64,000 nt of DNA from NCBI GenBank assembly GCA_977020255.1, contig CDROCS010000184.1, positions 62,001 through 126,000 of the forward strand. Direction: 5' to 3'. The position numbers and the translations under genes were made by a program. Positions within the stretch are counted from its first letter, which is position 1. Each line of letters begins with the position of its first letter. The stretch is from Obrimoposthia wandeli. Its lineage: Eukaryota. The notes under the pieces were generated by a model. That model was not told the origin of the DNA, did not search any database, and was given only the letters and a program-made list of their open reading frames with translations. This document shows positions 1-63,922 of this stretch, in pieces.

Positions 1-3000
1 AGTTGAATTATATATTAAAATATTAAATTGATATTCGAATGTACGAATGAATGTTATGGAACGAGTAAAGAGTTTTATTATTATTTAAATGTATGTATGA
101 ACTTTGTTAATTGGGTTCAGTGCAAGTATGAGATAATAAAAATATGTGAAAAGTACTTCTTAATTAATATAATTGATTTCAGATTACCAATGTTTTTCAT
201 TGATTATAGGTATTATTTGTATAATTCGCTGACAAGCATATAATTTGTGCTTATTCTTTTAAAATTTGCTTTGTAATTGTTGATTTTAAAATATTTTGTC
301 ATTGTTGGTAGACAAAAATTACTAGCATTAAAAGGCACATTTTTAAATTAAATATATGTATAACATGTTTAACTTAGAGTTAAAATAATTGATATTAGTG
401 TTTGAATATACATTTATATAAATACATCAATAGTGAAAAAAGAAAACGAGTTGTAATTTAAAAATATGTTTAAGAACTTTTTTTCAAAATTTTAGTTTTA
501 AAACAAAACGAACATGAACATTTAACACCAAATTTGTAAAAATATACAGTTAACTGTAAATGTAAAAATATAATACAAGTTAGTTAATATCTTATGTTGT
601 ATTATTCTTTATTCTTAACTAAAGTGTGTAATTTAGATTTTCTTTAAACCTGAGTATTTTTTAAATTATTTATCAATATTACACATCATTTTATTTTTTT
701 AAATAAATTAAACGATAATGAATATTAAAGGATATGTTTCAGAAATTAAATATAATATGTTTTATTTTTAAAAATATTTTATTTTATGTTTAACTCCAAT
801 TTTGAGTTTACAATACATTATATTTGTATTTTAAAACAATAAAAACCATGCAAAACCAGCGAAAATTTAAATATTTTAAAAAATAGTTGATTTTTGAATT
901 TCTAATCCAAAATTTGCTTTATTTAATAAGCTGAACTTTCATATTATTTTAATTATATTTTGTTGTAAATTAAAATTTGTTCAACTCTAAAAAATATCAG
1001 TAAAATAATTTAACATAAATTTTAGTTTTAAAAAAATTATAAAAATTTATTGCTAAAATTTATTAAATCTAAACAATTAAATCATTGCGGTGATTTAAAT
1101 ATTTATTTTAGAAAAGTATATGTAATTACCATAAAGGTAAAGTTAAGCTCATCTTTAATAGACGAACTCATCATGAAATAAAAAAGCTTGTTTGTTCTGA
1201 TTATTATCTTTATCTTGTAGATGTCAATAAATAAATGGTTGAACCCAAAGTATCTAAACAAATATCTACTTGAATCTTTTAATTCTAACCTTTTTTGATG
1301 TTTTCATCTATGGTTGACCATACCATTATTGTTGAACTTGCCTTCTAAAGATGAACCCTATCAGATACTCAAGCCTTGAAATAAAAAAGGCATTTATGTC
1401 AACACTTTCATCTATGGTTGACTACAATCCTTTAACTGTGTTACCCAACCGTAGACGGTCACAACCAGGCCCTGTAAGAGCCACTTGGAGGCCCATGTCA
1501 GGTTATATATGTTTTCCTTTATACTGAAAAATTAAAATTTGTACGTATTTATTGATCCGAAATAAAATAAAAATCAGATTCAAAATTTCAAAACACTAAA
1601 ACTAAATGTTTAAAAAAATAAACCGACCTTGTTTATTTTTTAATATTTATTATCAATAGTAAAAGATAAAATAAAACAATTACCTGTATTTTAAATTTTT
1701 TGGATTTTAAAAAATACAATTATAGAGTTGGATTCAGTGTTTAAACAAAATACTTCAATAGCACTATTTTTAAAATTTTTACAAACTAAATTTGTTAATA
1801 TTTATTAACACTATTTATTACTTACTTTTTAGTAGCTAACTAACAACTGTTACATACATTTTTATACGCAAAAAAGATTGGAATCATGATTGCATACTAT
1901 TGTTTTAAATTTTTCTTTAAAATTTTGAATTCATAAAATGATAAAACATATAACGTACCGCAAAATTTTCTAAGTCTGAAAGTTTTGCAGATTTTGAGTT
2001 CTAAACGTAAAATTTATAAATCAAATTTGTGTCGGCAGTTAGTTGTTCAACGAAAAAAATATTTGAGGCAAGTGAAAGTAGAATTACGCCAAAAATTAGG
2101 GCCTCTCATAGTTGTATTAGATTTTATATCTAAATTTTGGAGGCCCCTTGAATTCAGAGGCCCATGACTACTCCCATGGGATATTACATAATCACTACTG
2201 AGATATAAACATTTACTTCTGGGTGTTGTGCGCGCACATGAGTAGGGGCAATCCAAACTAAATAACTCACTCCTTCCATCTACTTTTTTAAAATTTAATA
2301 TATAACAAATGTAATTCTATCTTTTATTGTTAATTTTTATAAATTCTAAAACTTCTATTTACAACTGTTTTTATTGTATGCTTGTGTACTGTCGTTATAA
2401 TGATTTCATAAACATATCCATGTTTAACCATAAAAACGACAATACTGTTTTAAATGAAAACGAAAGTATACTTTAAGTATACTCAAGGACTAGTTTGTCG
2501 AAAGTATCAACACCGCCATTTATTTCGTTTTAGTATTGATTTATTACAGAAATCACCTAGTCATCTTCTCTTTTGATGTTGGCATCATAATGCATAGTGG
2601 ACATAAATATAACTGCTTTGCCCGATTTTGTAAAGTGACATGCAATAGTAATATGTTTTTGAAATTCAAATATTGTTGATACTTCCCGTTTTCTGTTCGG
2701 TAGAAATTCGACTGGTACACAAGCTTTGTTCTTTCATAAAGTTCCTACTAGAGTGAGGAGTTGGACTTTCAACTAAATCTGTGCTAGTGAAATAATTGTC
2801 ATTGCGATATTGCGATGCATTATGGTATGCAAATGGTCGACAAAGCACTTCAACAACTTTTTTAGTAAGTCCTACTGTACTTTTGTAGTTTTCCTTTCCA
2901 GTATATATGTTGGGTCTTTAATTAAAATTAATTAATTAAATTACAGTCAATTTAAATTGACATTTTATAAAATTATCTAAAGTGCCCACAATTATGGAGG

Positions 3001-3014
3001 TTTATCAAATTTCA

Positions 3015-3066
3015 GCCTCCGACGGGTTGTTAGCCCGTTTCGCCCTGCCGGGCTCGTCAGGAAGGC
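3015..3066 (-). ncRNA. Type I hammerhead ribozyme, intact core
   Basis: Minus strand reads GCCUUC-CUGACGA-GCCC(GGCA)GGGC-GAAA-CGGG(CUAACAA)CCCG-UC|GGAGGC: complete catalytic core, stems II and III perfect, 6-bp stem I with one GU, GUC cleavage between 3021 and 3020. Confidence 0.9.
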
Positions 3067-3857
3067 GGCGGTAAAAAATGCAATTTTGACAGCAGATTAT
3101 TTTCCGCCCAGTCTCTTCTGCCAGCAACAATTTGCGGCATTCCCTGCCGTTCTTCCCTCGACAACGTGATAGCGGTCGCAGTGGTCAACGGCGACTGCTA
3201 CACACCCGATCCCAGCGTTGCTGATCTTTTTCCCGGCTACCCACTCTCACTTGCAGCAGCCAGACAAAATTCCTTTGAGGGCGAGTGCGCACAATTTTTC
3301 CACGCCGGGGAGGGCCCAAATCGGACTGTATCGGTCGCGACCAGAAGTGAACTTTTGTGCTGTCACGGCCCATATCCTCCTCTTCCCGCACAACTCTTGG
3401 AGATGGCAGGCGAGACCCCGACAACATGCCTAACTCTCGTTAATTTGACAATAATGTGTATGTCCGTTTTGTTTAGTGATGGACTATAAATTGACCGTTC
3501 TGTTGGAAATTAGACAAGGTGTGTTTATTTTTCTCAACAGCGGTCTAATGTGTTTCCCCAATCTCCCTACCAGCAGACTCCTCTTTATACATCTCCCTAC
3601 TGATAATATGTATGTGTCTCTGCGCTGCCTGACAAATTCCCTGGCCAACCAGCATGCACAAATCATATATGTGCCCATTTTTCTATTTATAGATCAGCCT
3701 GCTGATCCTCTCTCTTATTGGAAATGTGTCATGACATTTAGACGATTGCTATTTATAGCAATCGTCGATTCGGATCAAACACAAATTTATCTCTATTTCA
3801 TTTTTCATACAGTCAAATATATCTCGGATCTACAAAAATTATCGTTCAGATTTATTG

Positions 3858-4035
3858 AAAACTTTTATGCTTACCAATATATGAATTGAAAACTTTTATG
3901 CTTACAAATATATGAATTGAAAACGTTTATGCTTACAAATATATGAATTGAAAATTTTTATGCTTACAAATATATGAATTGAAAACGTTTATGCTTACAA
4001 ATATATGAATTGAAAACTTTTATGCTTACAAATAT
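3858..4035. repeat. 31-bp tandem repeat, about 5.7 copies, inside LTR A
   Basis: Unit AAAACTTTTATGCTTACAAATATATGAATTG repeated with 1-2 substitutions. Confidence 0.95.
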
Positions 4036-4575
4036 AAATATTTAATTTTGAATTATTTGATCGTTTCTTCAACAAAGAGTTGGATAGCATTGTTGCTATA
4101 ACCAAATATATCATCGAATATTTCATTCTGACACAAAATATATTGGAAAAAATTACAATTTGAATTTCATACAATTTATTTGGACAATATCGTTATCCAT
4201 TATATAACATATATAAAATAAAGGATACGAGTTTTCAGAGTCGCATAACCACATTATTTTATGCCATATATATCAGGCTTAGATGGCATATATTGAAAAA
4301 TAGGAAAGTTGCTGAAGTACGAAGATATTTTCTCCTTGTATATTTTCCTTTCCGAAATTATGGTAAAATATTTAAAATTTTTAGTTTTCGAACTAAATAA
4401 CTGGCAAACACTGAAATATAATACTAATTTGCTAATAGTTGAAAAATTATCCATTTCCTGAATTTATCTCGTTTTTTTATTAGACGCGGCTAAAAAGTAT
4501 ACTATTGTCCATGCGTTTAAATTTTTTTAATAGTTTAAATATGATATTGAGTTTGAACACCGAATAAACAATTTA

Positions 4576-25763: not shown

Positions 25764-26710
25764 AGTAGTAGGTAGATGGAGTACTTCTGGAACAAAGCCC
25801 CCGGGGATATGAGGACAAGTTAAGGTCATGATGAGATCAAGGTCATGTAAGGTCAAGGACATCTTTACCAAAAGATATCTCTTGTGTGTGTATGTTCAAG
25901 GTTAAATCATATATGTGTATGTATGTGCATGTACTCTTTCAACTCGAGTGTATACTACCTCTATTTCTATGTAACAAAGGAACTATTCATTATAAAGTCA
26001 TGATAAATACATTTTGTTTAAATACATCAATTTCATAATTAGATTATTTAAACATGTGTAACAAAGCATCCTTTCATCATAAAGACATCAATTAGATTAT
26101 TTAAGCAAAAGTCATTTAATTAAATGTATAATATTAATTTAATTAACTCATATCTAGGTTATCATGTTTATTTTATTTAATTGAAATTGTATTATATTAT
26201 CCATTGTTAATTAAAAGAGAATTTGTTCTACTGCATCAATAAAATTAATTAATCCGGGAAGTGTATATAAGAGAAATATTCTAGTTTCAATTCATTATTT
26301 ATTAATGGAAGAAGTACAACAAACTTTGTTAAATGAGCTAATGGAGAGCGAGCACACTCTAGCGGAGAAGTGTTATCTTGCGGAGGGCTTGATGCTCCGG
26401 GAGGCTCTGAAAGTAGAAGAGATCCCGGGCTTCATTGACTGGTCATCAAATGGCCAACCACTCATCTTGCCAAATGAAAACTTTCGATGAGGCCCTTGAT
26501 CACAAACATGCACACTTGAGAACGAACCCAAAGTCCTCATTAGGATTACATAAAATAGGGATGGGATGAGAAGGGAAAATTTTCAAAATATGTTTTTAAA
26601 CTTCATATAGAAAATTACTTTTTAAAACTTTCGCTAATTACTATTAAAAATATCTAAACGTACTATATATTTATAAAAATTAAACTAAATTTAATTTTAA
26701 CTTTAACTAA
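25764..26710 (+). repeat. Left TIR of Polinton 1
   Basis: Reverse-complement match to 38820-39533 plus 40355-40511 (e.g. GGAACAAAGC..CGGG, GACAAGTTAAGGTCATGATGAG and the 26281-26600 block). Confidence 0.9.
26305..26490 (+). CDS. Small ORF inside the TIR (61 aa; frameshifted copy in the right TIR)
   Basis: TATATAAG about 40 nt upstream, GC-elevated; the mirror copy near 39040-39220 has an 8-nt deletion. Confidence 0.4.
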   Translation: MEEVQQTLLNELMESEHTLAEKCYLAEGLMLREALKVEEIPGFIDWSSNGQPLILPNENFR

Positions 26711-26739
26711 TTAATTATAATGTCTAATACTTGTCTGTC

Positions 26740-29700
26740 GGAGACTAATACCTTTACCTCTCATCTGAGATTCATCTTTTGAAGTCTCCAAGTTATATGA
26801 TTTTGGACGTAGAAAATCCCCTGCCTATAGCTAACTATTTTCTTGCTCTCATCTTTAAATTTACCAATCGCTGTATTAAGCGTTGTTTAAAGCGGATGGG
26901 TTTTTGGAAATTTCGAGGTATCCAACAGTTGTTCAGCAATCATAGGAGGTAACAATGTTCAAGAAAAAGCTATCGATGTCGCCCACTATAATTTTAATGT
27001 CACAGTTAAATTTAGCTCGATATTTCTCTAACTGCTCATATTGTAGCTCATACATACGAAGTTTGCTAAAATCTAATACTGCCTGGCCTATATAACTGGG
27101 ACGATCCAAAACAATATGTTCCTTATCCAGTAGAACTGTGATAAAGTCCGTATCGATTTCGATTGTCCTACGAAAGTGGGCTTTACTACAATAGGCAACC
27201 AGCTTCTGTGGATTATTACAAATTCGAAGGTTAATTATTTTCATTAGATTCTCAATGAGTTTTCTAAATAAAGAATTCACCTTCAGTTTATAATAATCTC
27301 GCTCGAAATCTGTTGTAGCTGCAGCTCTTTTAAGAGAACTATCCTCAATATATTTTGAAAAACATTAGTTTGTTCAAACTGTATTGCTCTGTATACAAAA
27401 TCTACCTTAACACCAAGTCTAACGTTTATTTGTAGTAATCTAGAATGCACAACATAATGTTTCTTAGGGAAATGTGTTAGTAATAATTTTTCAAACTTAC
27501 ACCCTGGTGGACACTGTTTAATTGGAGCAAGAGGAAGATCGTCGAATTTATTATGTAGCTCGTTAGGAATAGATCTATTTCCAATAAATGAGCGAAGCTA
27601 CTACAGTATATATCTGCTGATTTTAAGCTGGAAATAATATTCTCCAATAACTCTAATCGATCAGTTACCCAGAAAAGGTTACCACAAGGTAAAAACTGGG
27701 ACATTGCCTACCCGTAAAAGTTGTTCACATATATATATATACAAAAGTTCAGTACCGTTGATGGCATCCACCTTGTGCTCATTCACGAAGGTCATGACCC
27801 CTCGAATCCCAGACTGGAAGATACGGTATATCTCCGTATCCTGGATGAGCTCGACTCGTACAGGAGAAGCAGCAGAAGAATCCGGGCAAAGCAGTGTCTT
27901 GAATGCTGTAAAACATTTACTAAAATCATTACTTAGTGAAAAAAATTACTTAGTGAAAATTTACTTAGAAAAAATAAGTAAAATACAAACCAGAGATGGT
28001 GAAGAAATTGCGCGGCTCCAGTCCATCGTCACCAATGGTCTTGGTCCGGAATGCTGTAAATACATCTGCTGGAAGGTAGGCGTCAATCTTCATATAGACT
28101 AACATATAGTCCCAGAGTGATGTGCAGCAACTCTGAGTCCAGATCATCTTCACCATCTCATATTGTGCTGGCTTGATCTTCTCATCCCACTTTGGTGGTA
28201 AGCTAGTGATTGCTCAAAAAGCAGTCTCTGATACTGTCATATCATACGGGAAGCTGCCCTTAGCGCTCACCAGATGTTGCGGAAAGACCGAATGTGTTAG
28301 AGGAGTCACACCCAGAATTTCCACAGGTTTTTCAAGTCCACTGTTCAAAAATTGCAAGGAATTTATAAAGCGAATACAGATTTCTCCAATATGCACCATC
28401 ATAGCCTGAAATTTCTCTGTTGATTGAGGTATAAGAGAGACATTCCAGTCAGGAAACTTGCACAGTGCGTGTTTAGTATGTGGTGCATATCCTAACCCAT
28501 CAAATTATGAAAAATGACGGGAAAAGAGCGATTCAGTCTCCTTCATAAGTTGCATTTCGTGTGCGCTGCTCCGAGGTACTCGCCAGTCATGTGACCATGA
28601 TCTCGAATTTTGTTTGTCATTTTCTTCTTACACAGGTAACAGATTCGTGCGGCATTGAAACTCGATACCTGTTCCTGTGTAAGTAGTCGCATCACCTCGA
28701 TCGCATGCTTTTTTTTTACCATGGGAGAACAACCTCTTTCGCCAAGTCCTCTAATTTCTGCATGAAGACACTTATGGCACCAAGTACACTGGATGCGATT
28801 AGATACACCTCTGTTTTATAATTAAGTAGCCTATTGAGTTTACGAATACCAACATAATGAAAATTATCATTATTTTCTAAAAGGAGAAGATTGATTGACC
28901 TAGCGTCCGGGTATGCGGTTCTGTAAATTATATCCACATAGGGATTTTTAAAGTTATCCCCATCTGTTTGTACATTAGAAAACCTATAGAATGTAAATAC
29001 GTTGATTGAGAGAGATGGGTCCTTTCTTTCAAATCGTGGTATATTACATAAACGCATTGGCATTTCATTCTCATCAAAATCTAATTTACTCAACAGGGCA
29101 TCATATTGTTTAACCCGCTGAGGATTAGTGCGAAATACTTCAAGGAAAAGTACAGCTAAGATACTGTAAAGAAAACACAATGTGTTAGAGTTCTGCACAT
29201 TGATAACGTAATGTGAGAGTTCTAACTCAGATGGAGTAGGTATGTAACTACTCCCCTGGAGATAGTTCATTGTTGTTGTTTTAGTCACAACAAACGAAAT
29301 CTCCAGGAAGCGGTTCACTATTCAATTACTACTACTCTAATAGTAATTCTCAATCTTATTGATCCCATCTACTCCCGCATCTATAAGCCCATCATCTATG
29401 GGGAGCCTCCTATTGGAAAAATTCCAATCACGTGTTTCTCCAATATTGGAAAATTCAACACGCACCCCGAATTCCACCTTACAAGTTGCAAACTTGCTGA
29501 CTGTATCCCTTAAGCTAGTCAAAAGTGACTCAAGAACTTGTAAAATATTTGCATTGTCATTAGAAACATCTTATGACAATGTCTCAATCGTACCCCGAAG
29601 ACTAGTCTTTCGCTTAACGTCATCAACGTTGGGAAACTTCGCAACAGAGCTACCTGAAATGGGCACAACACTTCTCTTGCGAGTAGATGCTGGTGATTCT

Positions 29701-29778
29701 TCAAAACAAAGTTTTTTATTCATATTGCAATTCTAGAAAAAAATATAATAAATATAGAAATATCAAGAAACTTACCAT
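26740..29778 (-). pseudogene. Protein-primed family B DNA polymerase (pPolB), broken
   Basis: Ordered motifs GSSYIPTP, VINVQNSNTLCFLYSIL, RFINSLQFL, KGSFPYD, IFQSGIRG, YIYVNNFYG*AMSQFLP, RPSYIGQAVLDFSKLRMY, GDIDSFF; putative ATG exon plus a 43-nt intron at 29733-29775. Confidence 0.9.
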
Positions 29779-29799
29779 TTTTAATTTCGTTTATAATAG

Positions 29800-30400
29800 A
29801 CAGTTATTTGTTGTCTGATGCTTGCTTATATACTATTTTCGAACTAGTATTAAGCCAATCAGATTCATTTATCATTTAAACCAAGCAGAATTGAACATAG
29901 TTTACTGATTAATGTATGTAGTTGATTTTTCATTGATATTTAAATGATCCAAACTAGCCGCAAAGTATTTTTTGTATGCACAATGCTCTCAATGTTTAAT
30001 ATATGGACAATTGATATTTGTTGGATTTAATTGTTTTAATGTTTTTGAGTAATTTAACAATCTTAATTCAGAAAAATATATTATTTATAGTCTTTATTTT
30101 AGCTCCATTATATTTATCCAAAACAAAAAAATGATTTGGATACATCACAACAACGTTTTATTTCCTCAGTTATTTATTTTATCTTGAAATAACTATTACC
30201 ATCAACTAGTTTTAGTCGATGGTAATGCTTAATGAGATATCTATTTATTTTGCTTGATTTTCTATCCATCATACTCCATATAGGTTGCATTTTAAAAACA
30301 TAATGTTTAGGATAGAAGATTGCATTCACATCCATTATACATAGTTATTTTATTACAAATTCAATATTATTATCCATAAAAACTTCAAAATCAATAAAAT
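29800..30400 (-). pseudogene. Polinton accessory ORF, DEDD-exonuclease-like
   Basis: FYFIDFEVFMDNNIEFVIK*LCI...HYVFK...INRYLIKHYHRLKLVDG resembles the recalled Polinton VVD.QGF..F..KEL..YHGL..G family. Confidence 0.5.
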
Positions 30401-30450
30401 AAACAGACATTTTTATAAAAAATAATTTTATTTGATATTGTTTATATCTA

Positions 30451-33220: not shown

Positions 33221-33607
33221 TCATCGTTTTATTAGTCTACTAACAGGTACACCAACTATTGAGCTAACAATTGGTACGATAAATTCTAAAAATCCACCAC
33301 TTTGCTTATACAGCAACTTACGTTTACCGATTCGTGTTTTGATATGAAACAAAGTAAGTAGAGGTTTCTTATTCCGATTCATGTTAGCCTTAACAGTTAC
33401 TTTACCAGAAACTATTTTCTGTATCATATTAAGTAAATCATCTATTACAAAAGTAGGGAATGATTTAAGAATAGTTGGGCAGCAAATAGCAGGTGCACGC
33501 AGGAGAGAATTGAAATAGGCAATACTTTTAGATTTCTTATTAACAATTCTTTTCTTATTTGATTTTTGAGCAACCATTTTCCTTGCACTTAAAACTGATT
33601 TAATCAT
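33221..33607 (-). CDS. Basic Polinton protein with a KQSGGF motif (128 aa)
   Basis: Lys-rich, ends LYKQSGGFLEFIVPIVSSIVG; homolog at 60780-61177. Confidence 0.65.
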   Translation of the reverse strand: MIKSVLSARKMVAQKSNKKRIVNKKSKSIAYFNSLLRAPAICCPTILKSFPTFVIDDLLNMIQKIVSGKVTVKANMNRNKKPLLTLFHIKTRIGKRKLLYKQSGGFLEFIVPIVSSIVGVPVSRLIKR

Positions 33608-33639
33608 TTTTTAAACTTCAGATTTAACAGTTTCCTTTT

Positions 33640-34290
33640 AAAAATTCATCTTCGAGAAACATGTTTCTTTATTTATTTATAGACGGTAATTACTGATGGA
33701 TTGAATATATCAGTTCTAACTCTAAAGTCATCAAGACAATCTTGAGTAAAATCAATAAAAATGTATCCATGAGGCATAGTAGTTGCATCGTGAAATGAAT
33801 CAATTAGGAAATTTCTATTATTCGGGTAAGCTTGTCTTGAAACAAAATCAACAACCGTCTGATCACGTGGATTCTTGGAGTGAACAAGTTAATGTACATT
33901 TAAATTACGAGTTCTATGATTCCCTTCTTGATGAAATAGATTTTGCGTGATGAAAATAACAGTTACTTCATGTCGTGCTATTTTAGTGAATACATTATTG
34001 AAATCACTCTCTTTATTTGTTTCTTGATATAAATCATCAATAACAATAACATCATGACATTGTATTCGCTCAGACCAAGTATCATCGAATCCATTAATGA
34101 CTTTTATATTTTTGATTTTCTGAAACTCGATACTGATTAAACCAGCTTCTCCATCTCCTCCCTGATGATAATATATCTTATTAAACTTAAAAGTAAAGTA
34201 TTTATTATTTTGCAGTAACTAACATACAAAATGAGTTTTCCCACTACAACTAGGACCTACAATCTAAAAAACTGAATTTATTAAAATATA
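33640..34290 (-). pseudogene. DNA packaging ATPase (A32/IVa2-like)
   Basis: Walker A IVGPSCSGKT, Walker B VIVIDDL, then FITQNLF, KNPRD, HGYIFIDF; in-frame stops. Confidence 0.9.
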
Positions 34291-34320
34291 TCCACTAACA
34301 AACAATAAAAAACTCTTCTC

Positions 34321-34629
34321 TCAGAAAAAGCTCCTTTTCTCTTCTTTATTTGCATACTCTTCTTTCTTCTGATTGTATGACAGAATGAGACGATTGACTG
34401 CCTTTTTGTGCATCATTCTTCTTACGTGCTCCTCCAGGGGTAGATCTGGTGCATCAATGAGTTTCAGGACATCTTCTTCGATAACATTCTTCGAGATGAA
34501 GCTCTTCACCGCCTTGTCAACATCTTGCTTGAAATAATTCGGAGTAGACATAATGAAGAAGCAGTAAAAAGTAATCTGCTTATATACTATACATCTAAAT
34601 TCTAATTGGTTACTGATTAACAAAGACAC
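34321..34629 (-). CDS. Hypothetical Polinton ORF
   Basis: Open frame between known Polinton genes; probable start MSTPNYF; no homology recognised. Confidence 0.4.
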   Translation of the reverse strand: MSLLISNQLEFRCIVYKQITFYCFFIMSTPNYFKQDVDKAVKSFISKNVIEEDVLKLIDAPDLPLEEHVRRMMHKKAVNRLILSYNQKKEEYANKEEKRSFF

Positions 34630-34673
34630 TGACTAATAAAGACACTGACTAATAAAGACACTGATTAATAAAG
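34622..34673. repeat. 16-bp tandem repeat x3
   Basis: AAAGACACTGACTAAT repeated. Confidence 0.9.
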
Positions 34674-34879
34674 ATAAAGACGAATAAAATTTACACATGA
34701 TAACGATTAAAAATACGTATTTGATTAAGCATAGCTTTATTAGGAGCAGCAATAGTCCGTTTAGCTTTAACAAGATTGGAAGCAGCAGTAACACCCATCG
34801 AAGGAGATAAAAAATGCAATAACAATGCAAGCAGCATGTAAACTACCATAATGACCACATACTAAAATCTTACCACCAT

Positions 34880-35430
34880 TTATGATAGTTTCTTTATTAA
34901 ATTATTACTCTGTTTATAATATGTCAATATTGTTACTCTTAATTTTGAGTTTACAAAGACAGAAGTATATTTTAATTCCTTATAAGATATCTTATCCACT
35001 ATATATGTATTGATTACATGAGTGAAATCGGATTTCAAAAATTTAATTTCATCAAAAGCATCTCGATAATTGCCAATATATAATTGATTTACTAAAATCT
35101 CATTCATTTTTGTTTTGTTTAATTTTTTTACATTAAGTTGAGTAAATCTAGCACTAAACAGACTATCAAAAAGATTTGTCATGTGGTTCATCTCCATACT
35201 CGAGGCATGCACTATTATGGATTCCATAAAAGCCAAAGCATTTAAAAAATCTAATCGTCTCTTATCTTCTTCTTCAATAATTAGATCTATAATAACTTCT
35301 TCTATCGTCACTTCATCAATAGTTTCTTCTCTTCTTATAACTGTTGTTGTTGTTGTTGCTGGTGATTATGTTGATATTGATGTTGCTGCTGCTGATGATG
35401 TTGCTGATGTCATTTTCTCCATTTTATCAA
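34880..35430 (-). pseudogene. Hypothetical Polinton ORF with a low-complexity N-terminus
   Basis: TATATAAAAG upstream of ATGGAGAAAATG; one early stop, then 143 aa open. Confidence 0.4.
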
Positions 35431-35903
35431 TTCAGAGTCAATTTACTTTTATATACTAATTGAGGTTTGATTTCATTGTAGCATCAATTTCATCATAACC
35501 ACGTGATTTGATTGAAGTATTATTCAACTTTTTCATTGTACTTAACATCTCATGTAAATGTAGTTGATGACGTAACCTAAAGAGTAAAATAAACTACTAA
35601 TAAATATTATTCATGATTATTTTTTCTAATTAAAGCAACGAGAATAACTGAGGCAAGATCATTTAATGCATCCTGTACCTCTTTACATTCAATAATTTCA
35701 TTCATTTTATGATAAAGCAAATCAAATATAGTTTATAACCCAGAAAAATCTATTTTTAGTAACATTGCAACTTTTGCAACTATTTCCAAGTAATGTCATG
35801 TGATATTTTTGTCTCTAAGAGAAATATATTTTTAGTAACATTTCGATTATTTGCTTGTCTTTGTTTAGGAAATAAATAAATAACACAAGTGTGAATATAT
35901 ATA

Positions 35904-36388
35904 TTAAACAAAACAATATTCAATCAGATATTCATAACTTAAAGATTTAACACCAATTATCATTATCTTCCCGCTCGCAAAAATGTTCACGCATAGTGAA
36001 TTGTACTTGACGTATCGAAGTCGCGGGAAGATTTCTGGCTCGTAAACACAATCCGAACCCATACTCTTGCTCATCTTGCTCAGGTTTATTGGTGTTTCTA
36101 GATTGCTACTGAGACTGATTGACTGAATTCTTTCAATTTTTATATCAAAAGGAAGAGTGCTTTCATCCAACGCTGTTTTACAACTCATTTTTATGCATGT
36201 CCCAAAAGTATATATATATATTGAAATGTAAAAAATAAATTACCAGATTTGAAAATGATAATAGTATAACCTTCACACTTGAGTTGATACTGATGGGGAT
36301 TTGAAGTCCGAAATGGTAAGTGTTGAATGTTACTTACAACAATTCCCTTGTAATTAATATTCACTAATTTTATATTGTGAAGTAGCAT
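35904..36388 (-). pseudogene. TATA-binding-protein-like gene with a putative 41-nt intron
   Basis: IQSISLSSNLETPINL...YEPEIFPRLRY...NIFASGKIMIIGVKS matches TBP repeat 2; TIIIFKSG|TCIKMSCK is a repeat-1-like segment. Confidence 0.75.
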
Positions 36389-36468
36389 TTCTGATTATTA
36401 TTATAAACTGATTTGTTCTATTTATACTATTTGAACATATATTTTTAGATTACATGTGATCTCTTTGT

Positions 36469-37374
36469 TTAATTGCCTATGCTATGAAATCTAATATTTC
36501 TTACTCGTCTAAGAATAATTGTCTTGCAATATGGACATGAAATAAAACGATCTGAATATATTATACATGTGTTTAAGTGTTCACGTGGTAAAAATGCCAC
36601 GGAAAGCATATCCGTCATGCAAACAACACATTCGGGATTTGGTAAGAGGTATTTGATATAATTTATACGATGTTTTGGTTCAGATTTTATTTCTAAAGAT
36701 CTTAAATCCGTTATAAACTCATATATAGAATCATATTTATTATCGAATGTTTCAAACTTATTAACTAAAACGGCTTTGATTCTATCATGGCTATAATCAC
36801 GTTTCAGCAAAACTATTTGACGAGTTTCCATCTGAGCATCAATTTCATCATTACTAATATGATATTCACCAATACATCAGTTCTTGATTCCCATACTAGA
36901 TGCTTTACAATATCGAGTATGAAAGATTCTTTCAGGCATATTATCAATAAACTCAAGTCAGGGTACTGCTTTCTGACAGAAACAACATCGATAGGAATCA
37001 TTCCAAATATATACATGTGGGAAAATCGATAACGTAGGTATTTCAATATCATTAAAATAATTATTACGTACAATAACTACTTTATCCATTGGAGTTCAAT
37101 CAAAATCAATTTGCTTGATGCTGGAATCAATTATTGGTATATTTGATACATTCATTTTCAAAACTAACGAATATGTTTGGAAATATAGCATATGCTGCTT
37201 CATTAGTTTCAGATAGTACTCCCATTCCGATATTCCTCCCAGACAGTAAACACACTTTACATTATCCCTTGAATCATCGTGTTTATAAAATCCTGCTTTT
37301 GCTAAAGCTCTCTTATCTGCTAAACCAGTAAACTTTCTTCGTAATGATTCTAATCTTCTTTCTTCAGATATCAT
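36469..37374 (-). pseudogene. IAP-like gene (BIR-linker-UBA-like-RING), frameshifted
   Basis: RRLESL...LAKAGFY...DNVKCVYCLGGISEWE (BIR); CVVCMTDMLSVAFLPREHLNTC...CPYC (decayed RING). Confidence 0.8.
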
Positions 37375-37918
37375 CTTTTAATTTCTTCTTCTTGAAATCT
37401 TATCAAAAGGTTGTCGTCTAATGGTGAGTTCCCCATTTTGCGAAAAATAATGTGCAATAAATTTAGTAGTCATAACAAAATGGAATGAGGAAATTGTTTA
37501 GCTTATATAGTAAGTGAAAATCTATTTTTAGTAACATTGTTAGTATTTACAAGAAATATCATGGGATGTCTTTGTCTTAAGAATAAAGCAGTATAAACAA
37601 TATTTTAATAATGATTTTATTGAAAATGAATAATCAAAATAATCAAAGTAGAGCTAGTACATATATAGGTTCTGGTAGTAATTTATATGCTAATATGAAT
37701 TATAATAGAAATAATCAGAGAGAAAATATCATCACAAGTCCTACACGAGTAACCGTTGAACTCTTTAAGGATTTAACTAATACTAAACGATTTTCATAAA
37801 CAAGAATGTTAACGAATTAGAATTGAGACTAAACAATTTTTATAAACAAGAATATCGACTAATTAGAATTGAGATTTAGAGGATAAACAATTGAATATTT
37901 CAACTTATAATAGTAAAT

Positions 37919-38310
37919 ATGAATTTTGAAATGCTTTATCAACCTATGTATAAATATTATGGATATGAGATGCACATTTTGAAGAAAGCTCATAACTATA
38001 ATTTTACTTTTCCTATCAACATCGATCTGCTTAAATTTGCTTTTGAAGTATCAAATTTGACTTATGTGGATAAAGAGAGAATCAATATTATCTTCAGTCA
38101 ATTCGGAATCAACTATGCGCTTCAAAAAACAAATTCCTAATCAAAGGAGCAACTGCCACTTTCAAGCAGGAGAATGGAACAATATTCGATGGACCTCCTC
38201 CTAAATTAGAATGGATTATCTCAATCAGAATTCAAGGATGCAAGATAGGTCCCACTGGATTGGAAACTCTTATATGGAAAATAATTGAAGCTGTTAGAGT
38301 TGACTAATAA
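37919..38310 (+). pseudogene. Hypothetical Polinton ORF (broken)
   Basis: 73-aa ORF plus a downstream open stretch; no homology recognised. Confidence 0.3.
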
Positions 38311-38382
38311 ATTTTTGTGTCTTTATTTGTATTATTTTTATATATAAACAATAGAAATACTTTAATAATATTTATTATCAAA

Positions 38383-38607
38383 ATGACTAATAAACCTACT
38401 AAATCATTAAAGTCGAAAAAGAAAATGATGAAGGGTGGAAGTGTTCCTTTTATATTAGGAAATCTTTTAGGTAGATTGCTTGGTGGGGTTAATACGAATG
38501 CTATAAAATTGAAAAAGAATATGGATTATATTGCAGGTATACAAAAAGGGAATGGTATACTCGAAATTTTTGTAGGATTATATAAAATTGTAAGTGCAAT
38601 TGAATAG
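38383..38607 (+). CDS. Small basic protein with Gly-Gly motifs (74 aa)
   Basis: TATATAAAC at 38341; MTNKPTKSLKSKKKMMKGGSVPFILGNLLGRLLGG...QKGNGIL. Confidence 0.5.
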   Translation: MTNKPTKSLKSKKKMMKGGSVPFILGNLLGRLLGGVNTNAIKLKKNMDYIAGIQKGNGILEIFVGLYKIVSAIE

Positions 38608-39533
38608 AATTCTAGTGCATATATTGGTACAAACATTTTACTAAAAACTCCAAAGAGTTTGTAATTACATAAAGTTGCAAGTTTTTGCAATATAGATGCA
38701 GTACGTGACTGTCTTTGTTAGACACATACACAAACGTTTAAACATATTTATCTTATTATATAATACTTATTTTTATAAGTAGATAATTTAATGAAATTTA
38801 GAAATTATATAATACTTATTTTTATGAGTAGAAAGTTAAAATAAAATTTAGTATAATTTTTATAAGTTGATAGTACGTTTTGCTACATTTAATTGTAAGT
38901 AGCTAAAGTTTTTTTTTAAAAAATTCTATATGACGTTTAAAAACATATTTTGAAAAATTTAATTTTCCCTCCCATCCCTGTATTATGTAGTCCTGAGAAC
39001 TTTGGGTTCGTTCTCAAGTGTGTATGTTTGTGATCAAGGGCTTCGTCGCCAGTTTTCATTTAGCAAGATGAGTGGCTGGCCATTTGATGACCATCCAATG
39101 AAGCCCGGGATCTCTTCTACTCCCAGAGCCTCCCGGATCATCAAGCCCTCCGCAAGATAACACTAGAGTGTGCTCGCTCTCCATTAGCTCATTTAACAAA
39201 GTTTGTTGTACTTCTTCCATTAATAAATAATGAATTGAAATTAAAATATTTATCTTATATACACTTCCCAGATTAATTAATTTTGTTGATGCAGTAGAAC
39301 AAATTCTCTTTTAATTAACAATGGATAATATAATACAATTTCGAATTAAATAAAATAAACATGATAACCTAGATATTAGCTAATTAAATTTATATTATAC
39401 ATTTAATTAAATGACTTTTGCTTAAATAATCTTATTTATGTCTTTATGATGAAAGGATGCTTTGTTACACATGTTTAAATAATCTAATTATGAAATTGAT
39501 GTATTTAAACAAAATGTCTTTATGATGTCTTTA

Positions 39534-40350
39534 TGTTGGATTATTAATTAATAAAATAATTAAAAATGTAGTCAATTAAAATTGACATTTAAAATTGGTC
39601 TAAAATGCCCACAATTAGGGAGGAATGCCATTTCAGCCTCCGACGGGGTGGTCCCGTTTCGCCTTACCAGGCTCAGAAAAATATTGATTGCGGAGTCCTT
39701 TCCGCCCAGTTCTCTCTCTCTGCTGCCCTCAGTCGCAGACTGATGTTTATTTGCGGCATTCCCTGCCGTTCTTCCCTACTGGCGCTACCTGGGCCGTTTG
39801 TGTCCACTACGAGAAATGACAGCATATGTGATTGCGATTTGGTGCAATCGCCCTCTGGCTGGGAGTCAATAGCGTGATAGCGGTTGCAATGATCAACGGC
39901 GACTACTGCACACCCGATCCCGCTCAATCTCTCTCTCCCTGCCAACTGTTTCTCGCTACTGCTTTGGACAACAACCTCCATGCCTGGTACAGCGGAATAC
40001 AACGGCCACTACACTGCCACATTGCTATCTGTCTCTCTGTTCAACTGTTGTCTGTGTGCAGCATCTTCCTCATTTCTCCCCTCCAAATGATCTACTGTCG
40101 GTGGCAGCAGCACATTTACACACATTGGCAGCACCAGTGATTTGATTTTGCCACTATCAGGCTATGAAAACAGAGGGACATTCCTACATGATTAACGGCT
40201 AAAAGAAACTGCTTTATAAAGCAGGTATTCTAACATTGACAAACAAAAAATATACTTATTTGAATTCTAAGTTTTAGAAACTTATTTCAAAACAATATAT
40301 GTTGTCCAATTTGGCTCGTTAGATTTCTTATATCAATTTAGACTTTAACA
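39534..40350 (-). mobile_element. Solo LTR-like element B inserted in the right TIR
   Basis: TGTTGG...TTAACA with TTTA on both sides (39530-39533, 40351-40354). The left TIR shows the empty site. Homologous to element A. Confidence 0.88.
39636..39676 (-). ncRNA. Degenerate type I hammerhead (core deletion)
   Basis: CUGA---GCCU(GGUA)AGGC-GAAA-CGGG(ACCAC)CCCG-UC|GGAGGC; 3 core nt and the 5' stem I strand are lost. Confidence 0.75.
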
Positions 40351-40599
40351 TTTATGATGAATAGTTCCTTTGTTACATAGAAATAGAGCTAGTAGAAGGT
40401 AATAGAAATGAGTAATCTGTGACCTCAGATGACCTTGACCTCATCATGACCTTAACTTGTCATCGTACTCCCGGGCGCTTTGTTCCAGAAGTGCTACATC
40501 TACCTTCTTACAGTTATTTACAATTCAACCCGTATTATTTTCAAATTTCAAACAGGTACTCTTGTAATTATTTTAATTAGCTGAAACTTAATCATTTTT

Positions 40600-61227: not shown

Positions 61228-62170
61228 ATGGAAACGAGATGGTACGATCCTGAAGACCGAGTTGCATACAGTGGCATTGGGGCTCTATCATCAAACACAA
61301 AGTCGAGTTAAAAGAAAACTCATTCATGGTTGAGCAATCTACTAGCCTACAGTCTCAACAAACCAATGCGATAAGGTTTCCGACACGATCGTACAAGACG
61401 AAAGACCCTAATAATTTATGGCAAATGGATTTGAAAGAAATAATACCTTTTGAGCGTATTAATAGCGGGTACAAATATATTTTAACATGTATTGATGTAT
61501 TTACTAAATTTGGGCATGCCAATCCTGTAAAATCAAAATCCGGTAAAGATATAGATGCTGGCATACAAATATGATTGATGTTGTACCCGACAATGTACAA
61601 ACATATGATGGGAAAGATTTTTATTATAAACATGTCAAAAGAACTTTTGATAAATAAGGAGTTAATCACTTATCTGTGTTGTCACACTATAAAGCAGGCT
61701 TGGTTAAAATATTTAATAGAACATTGATGGATAAATTAAAGAAACATTTTGTTGCAATCATATCAAAGAAATGGGTAAGGGTACTATCAGAACTGATGAT
61801 TTAATATAATCATTCACCACATCGCGGTTTGGACGGTAAGCAACCTATAGATATTTCATTAGAAGATTGGTTTGGCCGTAATAATAAAACAATAATAAAG
61901 AAACCCAAATACAAAGTTGGAGATTTAGTTCGCATAACACGTTTAAGTATAACACCTTTTAAGTTTCGATAATAATTGGAATGATGAAGTATTTAAAATA
62001 TCAAAAATTAATTTGCATGTTAACCCCGTAATGTATAATATCACATATGAAGATAAAAGTCCAATATAGGAAAATGTTTATGAGCAAGATTTACAAGTTA
62101 TTGATAAACCAAAAGTATATAAGATCTAAGAAATCATTAAATCTAAAGGTCAAGGTAAGAATAATCAATA
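61228..62170 (+). pseudogene. Polinton integrase copy 3
   Basis: WYDPED, LWQMDL, YKYILTCIDVF, KPKYKVGDLVRI. Confidence 0.88.
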
Positions 62171-62908
62171 TTTTATACACGTTTCTTTTTAACTGCTGTT
62201 ACTACGTCATTGAATGCTGTTGTTGCTGCAAGTAAAGTATGGGAACTTCTTTAATACCATGTTGTTTCAATGAAAGTATCACATATTTGTTATTTATAAT
62301 AACATCATAAGCTGTATTTACACTATATGGTCCTACCTCTTGAGAATTGGAAATGTTATACGGCTTAGATTACTCAATCTTCCCTCACCATACTGTTTAC
62401 CTTGAAAATAAGGTAATTCCTCACCAGTTTGCGGTAAACTACATGAATCGATGACTTGACTAGAACGGCCAAACTTAATAAATTGAAATGTAGAGTGCCT
62501 TAATTTCTATAGTGTCTGTATTTAAAATATCACTATTTGTAATCATGTTTACTAAACAATCATCAATTAGTAGTAGTTCATTTATAAAACACCTGATTTG
62601 CTTGCAAGATCAATAGCAATTGCAAATGTTTTAAACGACGATGAAAATCTTTTTGTTTATGTAGCTTTAGCCGTTTTTCATCTTGATGATATATTCTTTA
62701 ATCGATGTAGATAATATCAATAATATCGATAACATTATTTATACAGATGAATCAATGAAACTATACAAAATACCTAAATTTAAAAGTGATAATAAAATTT
62801 TAATATTTTTTCAAATATAGTCCTAAGGATGTTGAGCAGGGAGTTAAAACTGCATTGAAAAAACCCGATATAAATCTTATTTATCTGATCAGATTGTTAA
62901 CTTGTTGA

Positions 62909-63922
62909 TGTTAAATAGTAATAATAATGAATAATTAATTTAAACCAACTTTTGAATTCTAAATGTTATCATATTAGACTCTCTTTGTGTTCAAGATGCT
63001 TGTTTGGTTTTTGAACTGAACTTGCATTTAGCAAATATATCACTCATTGTGCTATCAATAATGATGTTATTAATTCTTTAGTTCAGAATATTTCAATAAA
63101 ATTGTTAAAACGTTGGTGATTGTGACCCAAAGGTTTTTCAAACTGTCGGTATATAACATTTGTTGAATTGATTTATGTCCTCGTGTTTCAACTTTGTGTT
63201 AAAGATTTTTTTGTGATAGTATTTATAGGAGTGCTGCCCCTTTTAAATGTACCAGTATGTGTGCATCTGTAACCACAAGTTAGAAGGTATAGTCAACGGA
63301 TACGAGATACTACACAACTGGACCAGGCTGAAGAATCAATGCTACAGAGAGAGGGATCTTGACGGAGACGACTGTAATGTGGAGAGAGGGGATAGTATGC
63401 TGAAAAAATCGATAGGGACATCCGGTCAAGGAGATAAGGAGTGTGTGTGTTGGATTCACGTATTGTTATAAGCAAATGCTGCACTGTTATCTGTGAGGAT
63501 CAGGATTAGCAATGGGAGCGGACATGGCGTTGTCTCCGTAGCTGTGACCGGTCGGAGTAGATGAGTGGTCTGGAATACCACGTGTTGTTGCTGGGAGGTC
63601 CAATAGATAAGAGAAATCGATCCGAGAGAGATTTAGGGAAGCGAAGCGATCAACGCGTGATTGAGAGCGATCTCTGTCAAACTCGCTGTCACATAGTGGC
63701 AGTTGAGAATCTCTGAGTGGTTACTTGGATGGGTTAAATGCCAAAAATTAGACAAGTACCCGCGAGGTCAGATATAACAATTCGTGCCGTTTCCCTGATG
63801 AGTCCGGCTGAACGAAACGTGGTTTTTTCCTCGTTGGATAATGACAATATTTCGCATCCAAAAATTTGGGCATTTTTCTTTATCAACTTCATTAATTAAT
63901 TTTTAAATCTCAAAACCCAACA
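62909..63922 (+). mobile_element. Solo LTR-like element C (opposite orientation) with a hammerhead
   Basis: TGTTAAA...CCCAACA; the end mirrors the TGTTGGG of A; flanks TTGA/CTGA (one mismatch); TTTGGGCATTTT matches the reverse complement of the block beside the hammerhead in A and B. Confidence 0.65.
63785..63846 (+). ncRNA. Type I hammerhead ribozyme, partly decayed
   Basis: UUCC-CUGAUGA-GUCC(GGCU)GAAC-GAAA-CGUGG(UUUUUU)CCUCG-UU|GGA; one mismatch each in stems II and III; GUU triplet. Confidence 0.8.

What the first reader, a model, noticed from the sequence alone, without database searches (positions are those of the whole stretch)
2908..63922. Family of TG...CA solo LTRs each carrying a type I hammerhead ribozyme: candidate animal LTR-retrozyme or ribozyme-armed LTR retrotransposon
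Seen: three independent insertions (2908-4209, 39534-40350, 62909-63922) have LTR-type ends (TGTT...AACA), 4-bp TSDs (TATA, TTTA, TTGA/CTGA) and a hammerhead at the same relative position about 75-150 nt from one end. The LTR bodies are only patchily similar, yet stem II covaries (GCCC/GGGC, GCCU/AGGC, GUCC/GAAC). Established: plant LTR retrozymes are gypsy-mobilised, TG..CA-bounded, 4-bp-TSD elements with type III hammerheads, while animal type I hammerheads are mainly known from Penelope pseudo-LTRs and tandem non-LTR retrozymes. Inference: a two-LTR parent transcript would be cut at both ribozymes, giving a unit-length RNA that could circularise or have a poly(A)-independent end. This would combine plant-style LTR architecture with an animal-style ribozyme.
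Basis: partly seen in the sequence, partly recalled or inferred. Interest (0 to 1): 0.9.

Follow-up and report, generated by a model that had tools for sequence, protein, structure and literature searches.

The report
Solo LTRs carrying hammerhead ribozymes
Three roughly 1-kb insertions in an AT-rich animal genome look like stand-alone retrotransposon LTRs and share a hammerhead self-cleaving RNA motif near one end, a pairing so far described only in plants; only one of the three ribozymes is still intact and no two-LTR parent was seen.

Summary
The core observation holds in part. All three stretches share a homologous ~170-nt end module: a type I hammerhead, a small hairpin, a TGGGCA block and a CCAACA terminus. 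A pattern for this module matches 3 of 3 copies and none of 100 shuffles.

- **Copy 2 (39534-40350)** is proven to be a discrete insertion with TGTT...AACA ends and an exact 4-bp TSD (TTTA). It sits in one terminal inverted repeat of a Maverick/Polinton-like transposon, and the other repeat is the empty site.
- **Far ends of copies 1 and 3** are supported only statistically (chance about 0.03 and 0.10).
- **Ribozymes:** only copy 1 is canonical (Rfam Hammerhead_1 25.1 bits, below the gathering score of 34; hammerhead fold within 0.9 kcal/mol of the MFE). Copy 2 has lost helix I and part of the catalytic box. Copy 3 keeps the core but has weak helices.

There is no tandem or Penelope arrangement, no coding remnant and no paired LTR in the window. 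No relatives turned up in the public collections I could scan.

Best reading: solo LTRs of an integrase-mobilised retroelement lineage whose LTR carries a sense-strand hammerhead about 90-113 nt from its end. This is a retrozyme-like variant not found in the animal literature I searched. The internal region, RNA processing and circularisation remain untested.

The parts
2908..4209 (-). Copy 1: LTR-like unit of 1302 bp. Ends are TGTTA... (far end, 4209) and ...CCCAACA (2908), read on the ribozyme strand. It is flanked by TATA (2904-2907) and TATA (4210-4213). It contains a 31-bp tandem array at 3854-4036.
   Evidence: Sequence read; tandem repeat; chance of such a far end about 0.028; no coding hits.
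3015..3066 (-). Copy 1 hammerhead, type I and canonical. Helix I is 6 bp, the box is CUGACGA, helix II is 4 bp with a 4-nt loop, then GAA, and helix III is 5 bp with a 7-nt loop. The cleavage triplet is GUC, and cleavage would fall between 3021 and 3020.
   Evidence: Rfam Hammerhead_1 25.1 bits, E 1.9e-4 on a 131-nt slice, below the gathering score of 34; the only hit of a strict descriptor; hammerhead fold -20.7 against MFE -21.6 kcal/mol; a full motif arises in 1.5% of simulated windows.
2908..3020 (-). Copy 1 tail of 113 nt after the cleavage site. It holds a hairpin (3020-3016 pairing with 3000-2996), a TGGGCA block (2988-2983), a 16-nt palindrome, a TTAATTAA run and the CCCAACA terminus.
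   Evidence: Alignment A1; hairpin pair counts.
39534..40350 (-). Copy 2: LTR-like unit of 817 bp with proven boundaries, TGTT...AACA ends and the 4-bp TSD TTTA (39530-39533 and 40351-40354). It is nested in the right terminal inverted repeat of a Maverick-like element.
   Evidence: Self-BLAST; junction against empty-site comparison.
39636..39676 (-). Copy 2 hammerhead remnant. Helices II and III and the GUC site (C17 at 39642) are kept. The 5' strand of helix I and part of the CUGANGA box are missing.
   Evidence: Alignment A1 shows a ~21-column gap; no hammerhead hit at E<=10; helix II differs from copy 1 by a compensatory double change.
62909..63922 (+). Copy 3: LTR-like unit of about 1014 bp. 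The near end, ...CCCAACA at 63922, is homologous to copies 1 and 2. The far end at 62909 (TGTTAAAT, flanks TTGA/CTGA) is only tentative.
63789..63841 (+). Copy 3 hammerhead-like motif. The catalytic core is complete (CUGAUGA...GAA...GUU). Helix II has a C-A mismatch, helix III has a U-U mismatch or bulge, and helix I is about 3 bp. Cleavage would fall between 63835 and 63836. It is probably inactive.
   Evidence: Rfam best match only 13.7 bits, E 1.9; hammerhead fold -2.9 against MFE -9.7 kcal/mol.
25767..40508 (.). Context: a Maverick/Polinton-like DNA transposon that hosts copy 2. It has the 6-bp TSD TACAGT, 5'-AG...CT-3' termini and terminal inverted repeats of about 940 bp (25767-26704 and 38832-40508). 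Its left repeat (around 25992-25996) is the empty site for copy 2.
   Evidence: rve integrase ORF 32646-33224(-).

Best explanation
The three units are solo LTRs of one old, diversified lineage of integrase-mobilised (LTR-type) retroelements in an AT-rich, probably flatworm, genome. They may alternatively be single-LTR cDNA integrants.

The LTR carries a type I hammerhead on one strand, followed by a conserved tail of about 90-113 nt that runs to the ...CCAACA terminus. I read that strand as the element's sense strand and the tail as U5-like.

Mechanism, in order:
1. A transcript reading through an LTR folds the hammerhead co-transcriptionally and cuts itself after GUC or GUU. This step rests on sequence-level competence, in copy 1 only.
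2. In a two-LTR parent the cut in the downstream LTR gives a poly(A)-independent 3' end with a 2',3'-cyclic phosphate. This is inferred.
3. If the upstream LTR copy is also fully transcribed, both cuts release a unit-length RNA. A ligase could circularise it, and a gypsy or BEL-type reverse transcriptase could copy it without strand transfer, as proposed for plant retrozymes. This is inferred by analogy.
4. The cDNA is inserted by a DDE integrase, giving TG...CA ends and a 4-bp TSD. This is shown for copy 2.

The copies in this window are decayed relics.
For: - Exact insertion with TGTT/AACA ends and a 4-bp TSD, verified against an empty site.
- Matching TGTTA far ends with TSDs in copies 1 and 3 are unlikely by chance (0.028 and 0.10).
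- No terminal inverted repeat longer than 4 nt and no internal direct repeats.
- No coding remnants in the bodies.
- The hammerhead-plus-tail module is the only part alignable among all three copies.
- The hammerhead pairing scheme is 92% paired, against 36-51% when the partners are slid, with three compensatory pairs.
- The post-cleavage hairpin has one compensatory pair.
- Copy 1 is a complete type I hammerhead, with its hammerhead fold within 0.9 kcal/mol of the MFE.
- Gypsy-type pol fragments occur in the same window.
- In plant retrozymes most hammerhead loci are likewise solo LTRs with 4-bp TSDs (PMC4918200).
Against: - No paired LTRs, PBS, PPT or internal region anywhere in the window.
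- Only one of the three ribozymes is intact.
- With only three sequences, the covariation statistics are weak: 22 of 500 shuffles reach the observed value.
- Rfam does not report any of them at gathering scores.
- The ribozyme's orientation relative to LTR transcription is not established.
- The gypsy fragments in the window have no demonstrable link to these LTRs.
- No relatives were found outside the window.
Confidence: 0.55

Rival explanations
1. Real solo LTRs, but the hammerhead module is a passenger. A fragment of an animal hammerhead repeat (a non-LTR retrozyme or a Penelope 3' end) was captured once by an ancestral LTR, has been inherited since, and plays no part in the element's life cycle.
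For: Two of the three ribozymes are broken or weak. Type I hammerheads in animals are otherwise tied to Penelope-like elements and non-LTR retrozymes (PMC4209133, PMC7229834, bioRxiv 10.64898/2026.07.22.740005). Hammerhead activity is dispensable for insertion of a Penelope-like element in vitro (PMC11167929).
Against: The module is the best-conserved part of otherwise unalignable LTRs, and it keeps the helices through compensatory changes. A neutral passenger should have decayed as fast as the rest of the LTR. Decay of the ribozyme in old solo LTRs is expected under either view.
Confidence: 0.2
2. Not LTRs. They are single non-autonomous units derived from Penelope-like elements, or non-LTR retrozyme monomers, inserted by target-primed reverse transcription. 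The conserved 3' module would be the part recognised by the reverse transcriptase.
For: The architecture is a variable 5' body plus a conserved 3' end with a type I hammerhead near the 3' terminus, as drawn for Penelope-like elements (PMC8557442). Targets are AT-rich and the terminus is AC-rich, as reported for the Anolis element (PMC11167929). This is the usual home of animal hammerheads.
Against: Copy 2 has an exact 4-bp TSD, and its 5' end, TGTT, is the inverted complement of the 3' AACA. Similar TGTTA far ends occur in the other two copies. There is no tandem or partial-tandem arrangement and no inverted 5'-truncated partner. No RT or GIY-YIG remnants were found among the ORFs I scanned, including those in the bodies. 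Helix III is a stable 5 bp, unlike the minimal or 1-2-bp helix III described for the hammerheads of metazoan Penelope-like elements (PMC4209133).
Confidence: 0.1
3. LTRs in which the hammerhead lies antisense to LTR-driven transcription. The TGTTGG end would then be the start of U3, so the motif would act only on antisense or read-through host transcripts, if at all.
For: From my own memory, not tested here: many Ty1/copia LTRs begin with TGTTGG. Nothing in the window fixes the U3-R-U5 order.
Against: Conservation of an RNA motif argues that the strand carrying it is the transcribed, selected strand. The ~100-nt conserved tail behind it has the size and conservation expected of U5. A GGGCGG box in copies 1 and 2, and A/T-rich TATA-like runs in all three, lie 20-50 nt upstream of the ribozyme on the same strand. 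This last point is only a weak hint.
Confidence: 0.1
4. Chance resemblance: the hammerhead-like strings and the TG/CA ends are coincidences in a repeat-rich AT-rich sequence.
For: Rfam reports nothing at gathering scores. MFE z-scores are unremarkable.
Against: A full motif arises in only 1.5% of simulated windows, at a looser threshold than observed. The same module in the same place matches 3 times against 0 in shuffles. The empty site proves that copy 2 is an insertion.
Confidence: 0.02

Closest known systems
Plant LTR retrozymes (Cervera, Urbina & de la Pena 2016, PMC4918200)
   Same: A hammerhead is embedded in an LTR bounded by TG...CA-type ends with 4-bp TSDs. The units are non-coding. 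Many genomic loci are solo LTRs. The ribozyme lies downstream of the LTR promoter in NbRZ1 (PMC12029980), comparable to the position near the LTR 3' end proposed here.
   Different: The plant ribozyme is type III and here it is type I. Plant LTRs are about 350 bp and GC-rich, while these are 0.8-1.3 kb. Plant elements have two LTRs with a tRNA-Met PBS and a PPT, and circular RNAs have been demonstrated. None of those features is seen or testable here. The host is an animal.
Metazoan non-LTR retrozymes (Cervera & de la Pena 2020, PMC7229834)
   Same: Animal host. Type I hammerhead with a 6-bp helix I and a 4-bp helix II. Non-coding.
   Different: Those are 170-400-bp tandem repeats without LTR, PBS or PPT features, and with TSDs longer than 4 bp when present. 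These are single units of about 1 kb with TG...CA ends and a 4-bp TSD.
Penelope-like element pseudo-LTRs and Terminons (PMC4209133, PMC8557442, PMC11167929)
   Same: A type I hammerhead near the 3' end of a retroelement repeat in animals, with AT-rich targets.
   Different: Penelope-like elements form partial tandems or inverted copies, are 5'-truncated, carry a 30-40-bp tail and encode RT plus GIY-YIG. In metazoan elements the hammerheads are mostly minimal or have a very short helix III. None of this is seen here.
LTR elements with small-RNA-derived modules in their LTRs (Cassandra, Helenus and Ajax; PMC10886601)
   Same: A structured-RNA module sits inside the LTR of an LTR retrotransposon. 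The LTRs are unrelated in sequence to those of the presumed autonomous partner.
   Different: Those modules are 5S rRNA-like or tRNA-like Pol III genes, not self-cleaving ribozymes. Two-LTR copies are documented for them.

Membership tests
Hammerhead ribozyme, type I (Rfam RF00163) | Complete catalytic core: CUGANGA, GAA, A15.1-U16.1 pair, H17, G10.1-C11.1 pair | tested here: met
   Met in copy 1 (3015-3066, minus strand) and copy 3 (63789-63841, plus strand). Not met in copy 2, where part of the CUGANGA box is missing.
Hammerhead ribozyme, type I (Rfam RF00163) | Three helices, with helix I open and helices II and III closed by loops | tested here: met
   Copy 1 has helices of 6, 4 and 5 bp. 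Copy 3 has mismatches in all three helices, and its hammerhead fold is 6.8 kcal/mol above the MFE. Across the three copies, 92% of cells are paired.
Hammerhead ribozyme, type I (Rfam RF00163) | Score at or above the Rfam gathering score (34 bits) | tested here: not met
   Copy 1 scores 25.1 bits on a 131-nt slice. There are no hits in whole-window scans. Copy 3 scores 13.7 bits, to a different hammerhead model. Copy 2 has no hit.
Hammerhead ribozyme, type I (Rfam RF00163) | Self-cleavage demonstrated | not testable with these tools
   Needs in vitro transcription of the natural copy-1 sequence.
LTR of an LTR retrotransposon (solo LTR) | 5'-TG...CA-3' ends with a short terminal inverted repeat | tested here: met
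   TGTT...AACA in copy 2, with boundaries fixed by the empty site. The same ends are proposed for copies 1 and 3.
LTR of an LTR retrotransposon (solo LTR) | Target-site duplication of 4-6 bp | tested here: met
   Copy 2: TTTA, 4 of 4, present once in the empty site. Copy 1: TATA, 4 of 4. Copy 3: 3 of 4. Null rates are 0.026-0.10.
LTR of an LTR retrotransposon (solo LTR) | Other copies occur as direct-repeat pairs flanking a PBS, an internal region and a PPT | tested here: inconclusive
   There is no pair in the 64-kb window.
Plant-type LTR retrozyme | Type III hammerhead in each of two ~350-bp LTRs | tested here: not met
   The topology here is type I. The units are 0.8-1.3 kb and single.
Plant-type LTR retrozyme | Non-coding internal region with a tRNA-Met PBS and a PPT; circular RNA of the inter-ribozyme segment | not testable with these tools
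   No internal region is present in the window, and there are no RNA data.
Metazoan non-LTR retrozyme | Head-to-tail tandem repeats of 170-400 bp, each with a type I hammerhead | tested here: not met
   The units are single and dispersed, with no tandem arrangement of the module.
Penelope-like element pseudo-LTR | Partial tandem or inverted arrangement next to an RT plus GIY-YIG ORF, with 5' truncation and a tail | tested here: not met
   Copy 2 is flanked directly by Maverick repeat sequence on both sides. No RT or GIY-YIG hits were found in the bodies or among the larger ORFs that I submitted to Pfam; only some of the window's larger ORFs were scanned.

The most novel reading that the evidence does not exclude
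An animal, probably flatworm, lineage of LTR retroelements has built a type I hammerhead into the R/U5 part of its LTR. It would use the ribozyme either to make poly(A)-independent RNA 3' ends or to release unit-length RNAs that circularise and template reverse transcription. That would be a metazoan counterpart of plant LTR retrozymes, arisen independently with the other ribozyme topology.
Probability: 0.35. Interest if true: 0.75.

Novelty: new variant of a known kind. Interest (0 to 1): 0.58.

Why it matters
The current picture divides cleanly. Plants have LTR retrozymes with type III hammerheads, mobilised by gypsy machinery. Animals have type I hammerheads in tandem non-LTR retrozymes tied to Penelope-like elements. 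An animal LTR family carrying a type I hammerhead would break that division. It would show that ribozyme-armed LTRs evolved more than once.

It would also give a second, independent system for testing two ideas: whether ribozyme-defined RNA ends or RNA circles can replace the R-region strand transfer of retroviral-type replication, and whether self-cleavage can stand in for polyadenylation in a Pol II retroelement transcript.

If only decayed solo LTRs exist in the genome, the finding is a modest curiosity of repeat annotation.

Tried and rejected
- **Rfam scans.** Whole-window scans at gathering scores and at E<=10 found no hammerhead. Only short slices recover copy 1.
- **More copies or a partner LTR in the window.** Self-BLAST, nhmmer with --max, a structural descriptor and end-motif searches all found only the three copies.
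- **Empty sites for copies 1 and 3.** None were found.
- **Reaching other genome copies through ORFs called inside the LTR body.** No homologues were found. The host proteome is evidently absent from the protein collection, since the best CFAP58 hit is 64% identical.
- **Collection scans with the family-specific module pattern.** JGI metagenomes, IMG/VR and GTDB genomes gave 0 hits each.
- **Looser hammerhead pattern in metagenomes.** This gave 26 loci, all unrelated: GC-rich bacterial or phage hammerheads, plus one AT-rich family in inverted repeats.
- **Linking the LTRs to the gypsy fragments at 40.6-46.8 kb.** Copy 2 turned out to be nested in a Maverick repeat, not adjacent to the gypsy gag as an LTR would be. 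I recognised no PBS or PPT.
- **TGGGCGG and TGGGCA blocks as primer-binding sites.** Rejected by eye and from general knowledge, not by a tool. The implied tRNA 3' end would have a C discriminator, and the blocks lie inside the LTR, not after it.
- **Self-priming through the post-cleavage hairpin.** Rejected because the LTR continues about 90 nt beyond it.
- **DNA-transposon readings (Ginger or other families with 4-bp TSDs).** Rejected because the terminal inverted repeat is only 4 nt.
- **MFE z-scores.** Uninformative.

Full report
**What the window is**

It has no N runs. It is AT-rich: GC is 22-38% in 2-kb windows. It is eukaryotic.
- One long exon encodes the CFAP58 central coiled coil (18643-20418, minus strand; Pfam E 5.6e-121). 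There is also an AMSH-like JAB/USP8 ORF (53449-54375, plus strand).
- The best CFAP58 relatives in 5.8 billion proteins are only 64% identical, mostly molluscs, hemichordates and annelids, so the host proteome is not in the collection.
- In a quick ML tree the window's protein sits with the flatworms Paragonimus and Macrostomum. This is a tentative placement and long-branch attraction is possible.
- The window is full of transposon debris: gypsy-type PR, RT, RNase H and IN fragments, rve integrases, and a Polinton-type polB fragment.

**Checking the observation: the ribozymes**

Rfam reports no hammerhead in the whole window, at gathering scores or at E<=10. On 131-nt slices the results differ by copy.
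- **Copy 1 (3015-3066, minus strand).** It matches Hammerhead_1 end to end at 25.1 bits, E 1.9e-4, below the gathering score of 34. The loss is mainly due to an 11-nt insertion in loop III.
  - Read directly, it has every core nucleotide, a 6-bp helix I, a 4-bp helix II with a 4-nt loop, a 5-bp helix III with a 7-nt loop and a GUC site.
  - It is the only hit of a strict descriptor in the window.
  - Its hammerhead fold (-20.7 kcal/mol) is within 0.9 kcal/mol of the MFE.
  - A complete motif at a looser threshold turns up in 3 of 200 simulated windows.
- **Copy 2.** It keeps helices II and III and the GUC. A ~21-column gap relative to copy 1 removes the 5' strand of helix I and part of the CUGANGA box. 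Rfam finds nothing.
- **Copy 3.** The core is complete, with a GUU site. It has a C-A mismatch in helix II, a U-U mismatch or bulge in helix III and only about 3 bp of helix I. Its hammerhead fold is 6.8 kcal/mol worse than the MFE.

So there is one plausibly active ribozyme, one doubtful and one dead.

**Checking the observation: homology of the module**

On the ribozyme strand all three copies align over about 170-200 nt (alignment A1). The order is:
1. hammerhead;
2. a 4-5-bp hairpin made by the first bases after the cleavage site;
3. a block containing TGGGCA;
4. a 16-nt palindrome, in copies 1 and 2 only;
5. a TTAATTAA run;
6. the terminus (C/T)CCAACA.

Supporting numbers:
- Cleavage sites lie 113, 108 and 87 nt from the end.
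- A degenerate pattern spanning helix III to the TGGGCA block matches exactly these three places and none of 100 shuffles.
- An nhmmer profile finds no fourth copy.
- On the hammerhead pairing scheme 92% of cells pair, against 36-51% when partners are slid by 1-3 columns. Three pairs change on both sides: two in helix II and one in helix I. With three sequences this is suggestive, not strong, since 22 of 500 shuffles reach the observed value.
- The post-cleavage hairpin is 93% paired, with one compensatory pair.
- Outside the module, copies 1 and 2 share only two short patches, and copy 3 shares nothing detectable by BLAST.

**Checking the observation: ends and duplications**

The decisive result came from self-BLAST.
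- Sequence on both sides of copy 2 is repeated, inverted, at 25767-26704, at 90-95% identity, without the 817 bp.
- Side by side, the filled site reads ...cTTTA|TGTT...AACA|TTTAtgatg..., and the empty site reads ...cTTTAtaatg....
- Copy 2 is therefore an exact insertion at 39534-40350, with a 4-nt terminal inverted repeat (TGTT/AACA) and a 4-bp duplication of TTTA.
- The host repeats are the ~940-bp terminal inverted repeats of a 14.7-kb Maverick/Polinton-like element at 25767-40508. It has the 6-bp TSD TACAGT, 5'-AG...CT-3' termini and an rve integrase ORF.

For copies 1 and 3 no empty site exists in the window, so I asked how often a position with the same flank has a TGTTA start 500-1500 nt away preceded by a matching 4-mer.
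- Copy 1 (TATA, 4 of 4): 0.028.
- Copy 3 (3 of 4 or better): 0.10.
- Copy 3 has other 3-of-4 candidates at 63065 and 62197, so its far end is tentative.
- All three far ends begin TGTTA(A/T)A.

**What it is**

- The termini, the short inverted repeat, the 4-bp TSD and the 0.8-1.3-kb size are the signature of DDE-integrase insertion of an LTR. So are the absence of long terminal inverted repeats, poly(A), tandem structure, internal direct repeats and coding remnants.
- The units are solo LTRs, or single-LTR cDNA products of the kind Cervera et al. envisage for circular templates (PMC4918200).
- DNA-transposon readings fail on the 4-nt inverted repeat.
- A Penelope-type reading deserves respect. 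Penelope-like elements carry type I hammerheads near their 3' ends, have conserved 3' modules, are 5'-truncated and hit AT-rich targets (PMC8557442, PMC11167929). It does not predict a 5' end that mirrors the 3' end, an exact 4-bp TSD or single units without partial tandems. In addition, the hammerheads of metazoan Penelope-like elements are minimal or have a 1-2-bp helix III (PMC4209133), whereas helix III here is a stable 5 bp.

**How it probably works**

I take the ribozyme strand to be the element's sense strand, for three reasons.
- An RNA motif conserved through compensatory change implies selection on that transcript.
- The conserved ~100-nt tail behind the ribozyme has the size and conservation expected of U5.
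- A GGGCGG box (copies 1 and 2) and A/T-rich TATA-like runs (all three) lie 20-50 nt upstream on the same strand. This is a weak hint that transcription starts at or just before the ribozyme.

Two variants follow.
- **Start upstream of helix I.** Both LTR copies in a full element cleave. A unit-length 5'-OH/2',3'-cyclic-phosphate RNA is released and can be circularised. This is the plant retrozyme scheme, in which the NbRZ1 LTR transcript is indeed cut by its own ribozyme (PMC12029980).
- **Start inside the ribozyme.** Only the downstream LTR copy is complete. The ribozyme then acts as a poly(A)-independent 3'-end maker, with a short R region. No AATAAA is conserved in the tails (read).

Shown here: integrase-type insertion (copy 2), sequence-level competence of copy 1, and conservation of the module. 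Inferred: orientation, transcription, cleavage in vivo, circularisation and the identity of the mobilising element.

**Comparison with what is known**

- The held literature states that animal type I hammerhead repeats are tandem, lack LTRs, PBS and PPT, and have TSDs longer than 4 bp (PMC7229834, PMC7761336).
- A 2026 preprint derives them from Penelope pseudo-LTRs (10.64898/2026.07.22.740005).
- LTR retrozymes are described only in plants and carry type III ribozymes (PMC4918200).
- Five full-text searches found no animal LTR-hammerhead report. I could not consult Repbase or Dfam.
- I therefore rate this a new variant of a known kind, conditional on the LTR reading.

**Limits**

- There are only three decayed copies.
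- There is no two-LTR parent.
- No other part of the genome or related genomes could be reached.
- There are no RNA data.

Noticed in passing
window 25767-40508: A 14.7-kb Maverick/Polinton-like DNA transposon. It has the 6-bp TSD TACAGT (25761-25766 and 40509-40514), 5'-AG...CT-3' termini, terminal inverted repeats of about 940 bp at 90% identity, an rve integrase ORF (32646-33224, minus strand) and a RING-finger ORF (36469-36831, minus strand). No polB ORF was recognised inside it. A diverged (66-73% identity), inverted relative runs from at least 59507 to 62171 towards the window end, and copy 3 probably lies inside that relative.
   Followed up: partly
window 40600-43700 (+) and 43700-46800 (-): Two gypsy-type fragments lie tail to tail: gag and PR on the plus strand, and PR, RT, RNase H and IN on the minus strand. 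Their sense strands are extremely G-poor and A-rich (GC skew -0.37 and +0.44, AT skew +0.19 and -0.37 on the plus strand). This looks like G-to-A hypermutation of retroelement cDNA, or an intrinsically A-rich element.
   Followed up: no
window 47418-48116 (+): An isolated fragment of a protein-primed type B DNA polymerase (Pfam DNA_pol_B_2, E 5.7e-8), presumably from another Maverick/Polinton.
   Followed up: no
window 3854-4036 and 4575-4800: A 31-bp tandem array (5.9 copies, 95% matches) lies inside the AT-rich far part of copy 1. A 99-bp tandem array (2 copies, identical) lies just outside copy 1.
   Followed up: no
L005, L007, L014, L016, L021, L025 (JGI samples Ga0157362-Ga0157364): Six AT-rich (28-34% GC) metagenome contigs share a hammerhead-like motif embedded in 300-1000-bp inverted repeats. 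The origin is unknown and they are unrelated to the window's module.
   Followed up: partly
L023:131-175 and 906-953: Two type I hammerheads lie 775 bp apart in direct orientation on a 64%-GC metagenome contig. Each is followed by a similar short ORF start, which looks like a phage or bacterial arrangement.
   Followed up: no
window 8341-8514 (-): A short ORF ending ...QQDNVPAHVGRK resembles, from memory, the DDE region of Tc1/mariner transposases. It lies in a GC-richer island at 8701-9800 that was not otherwise explained.
   Followed up: no
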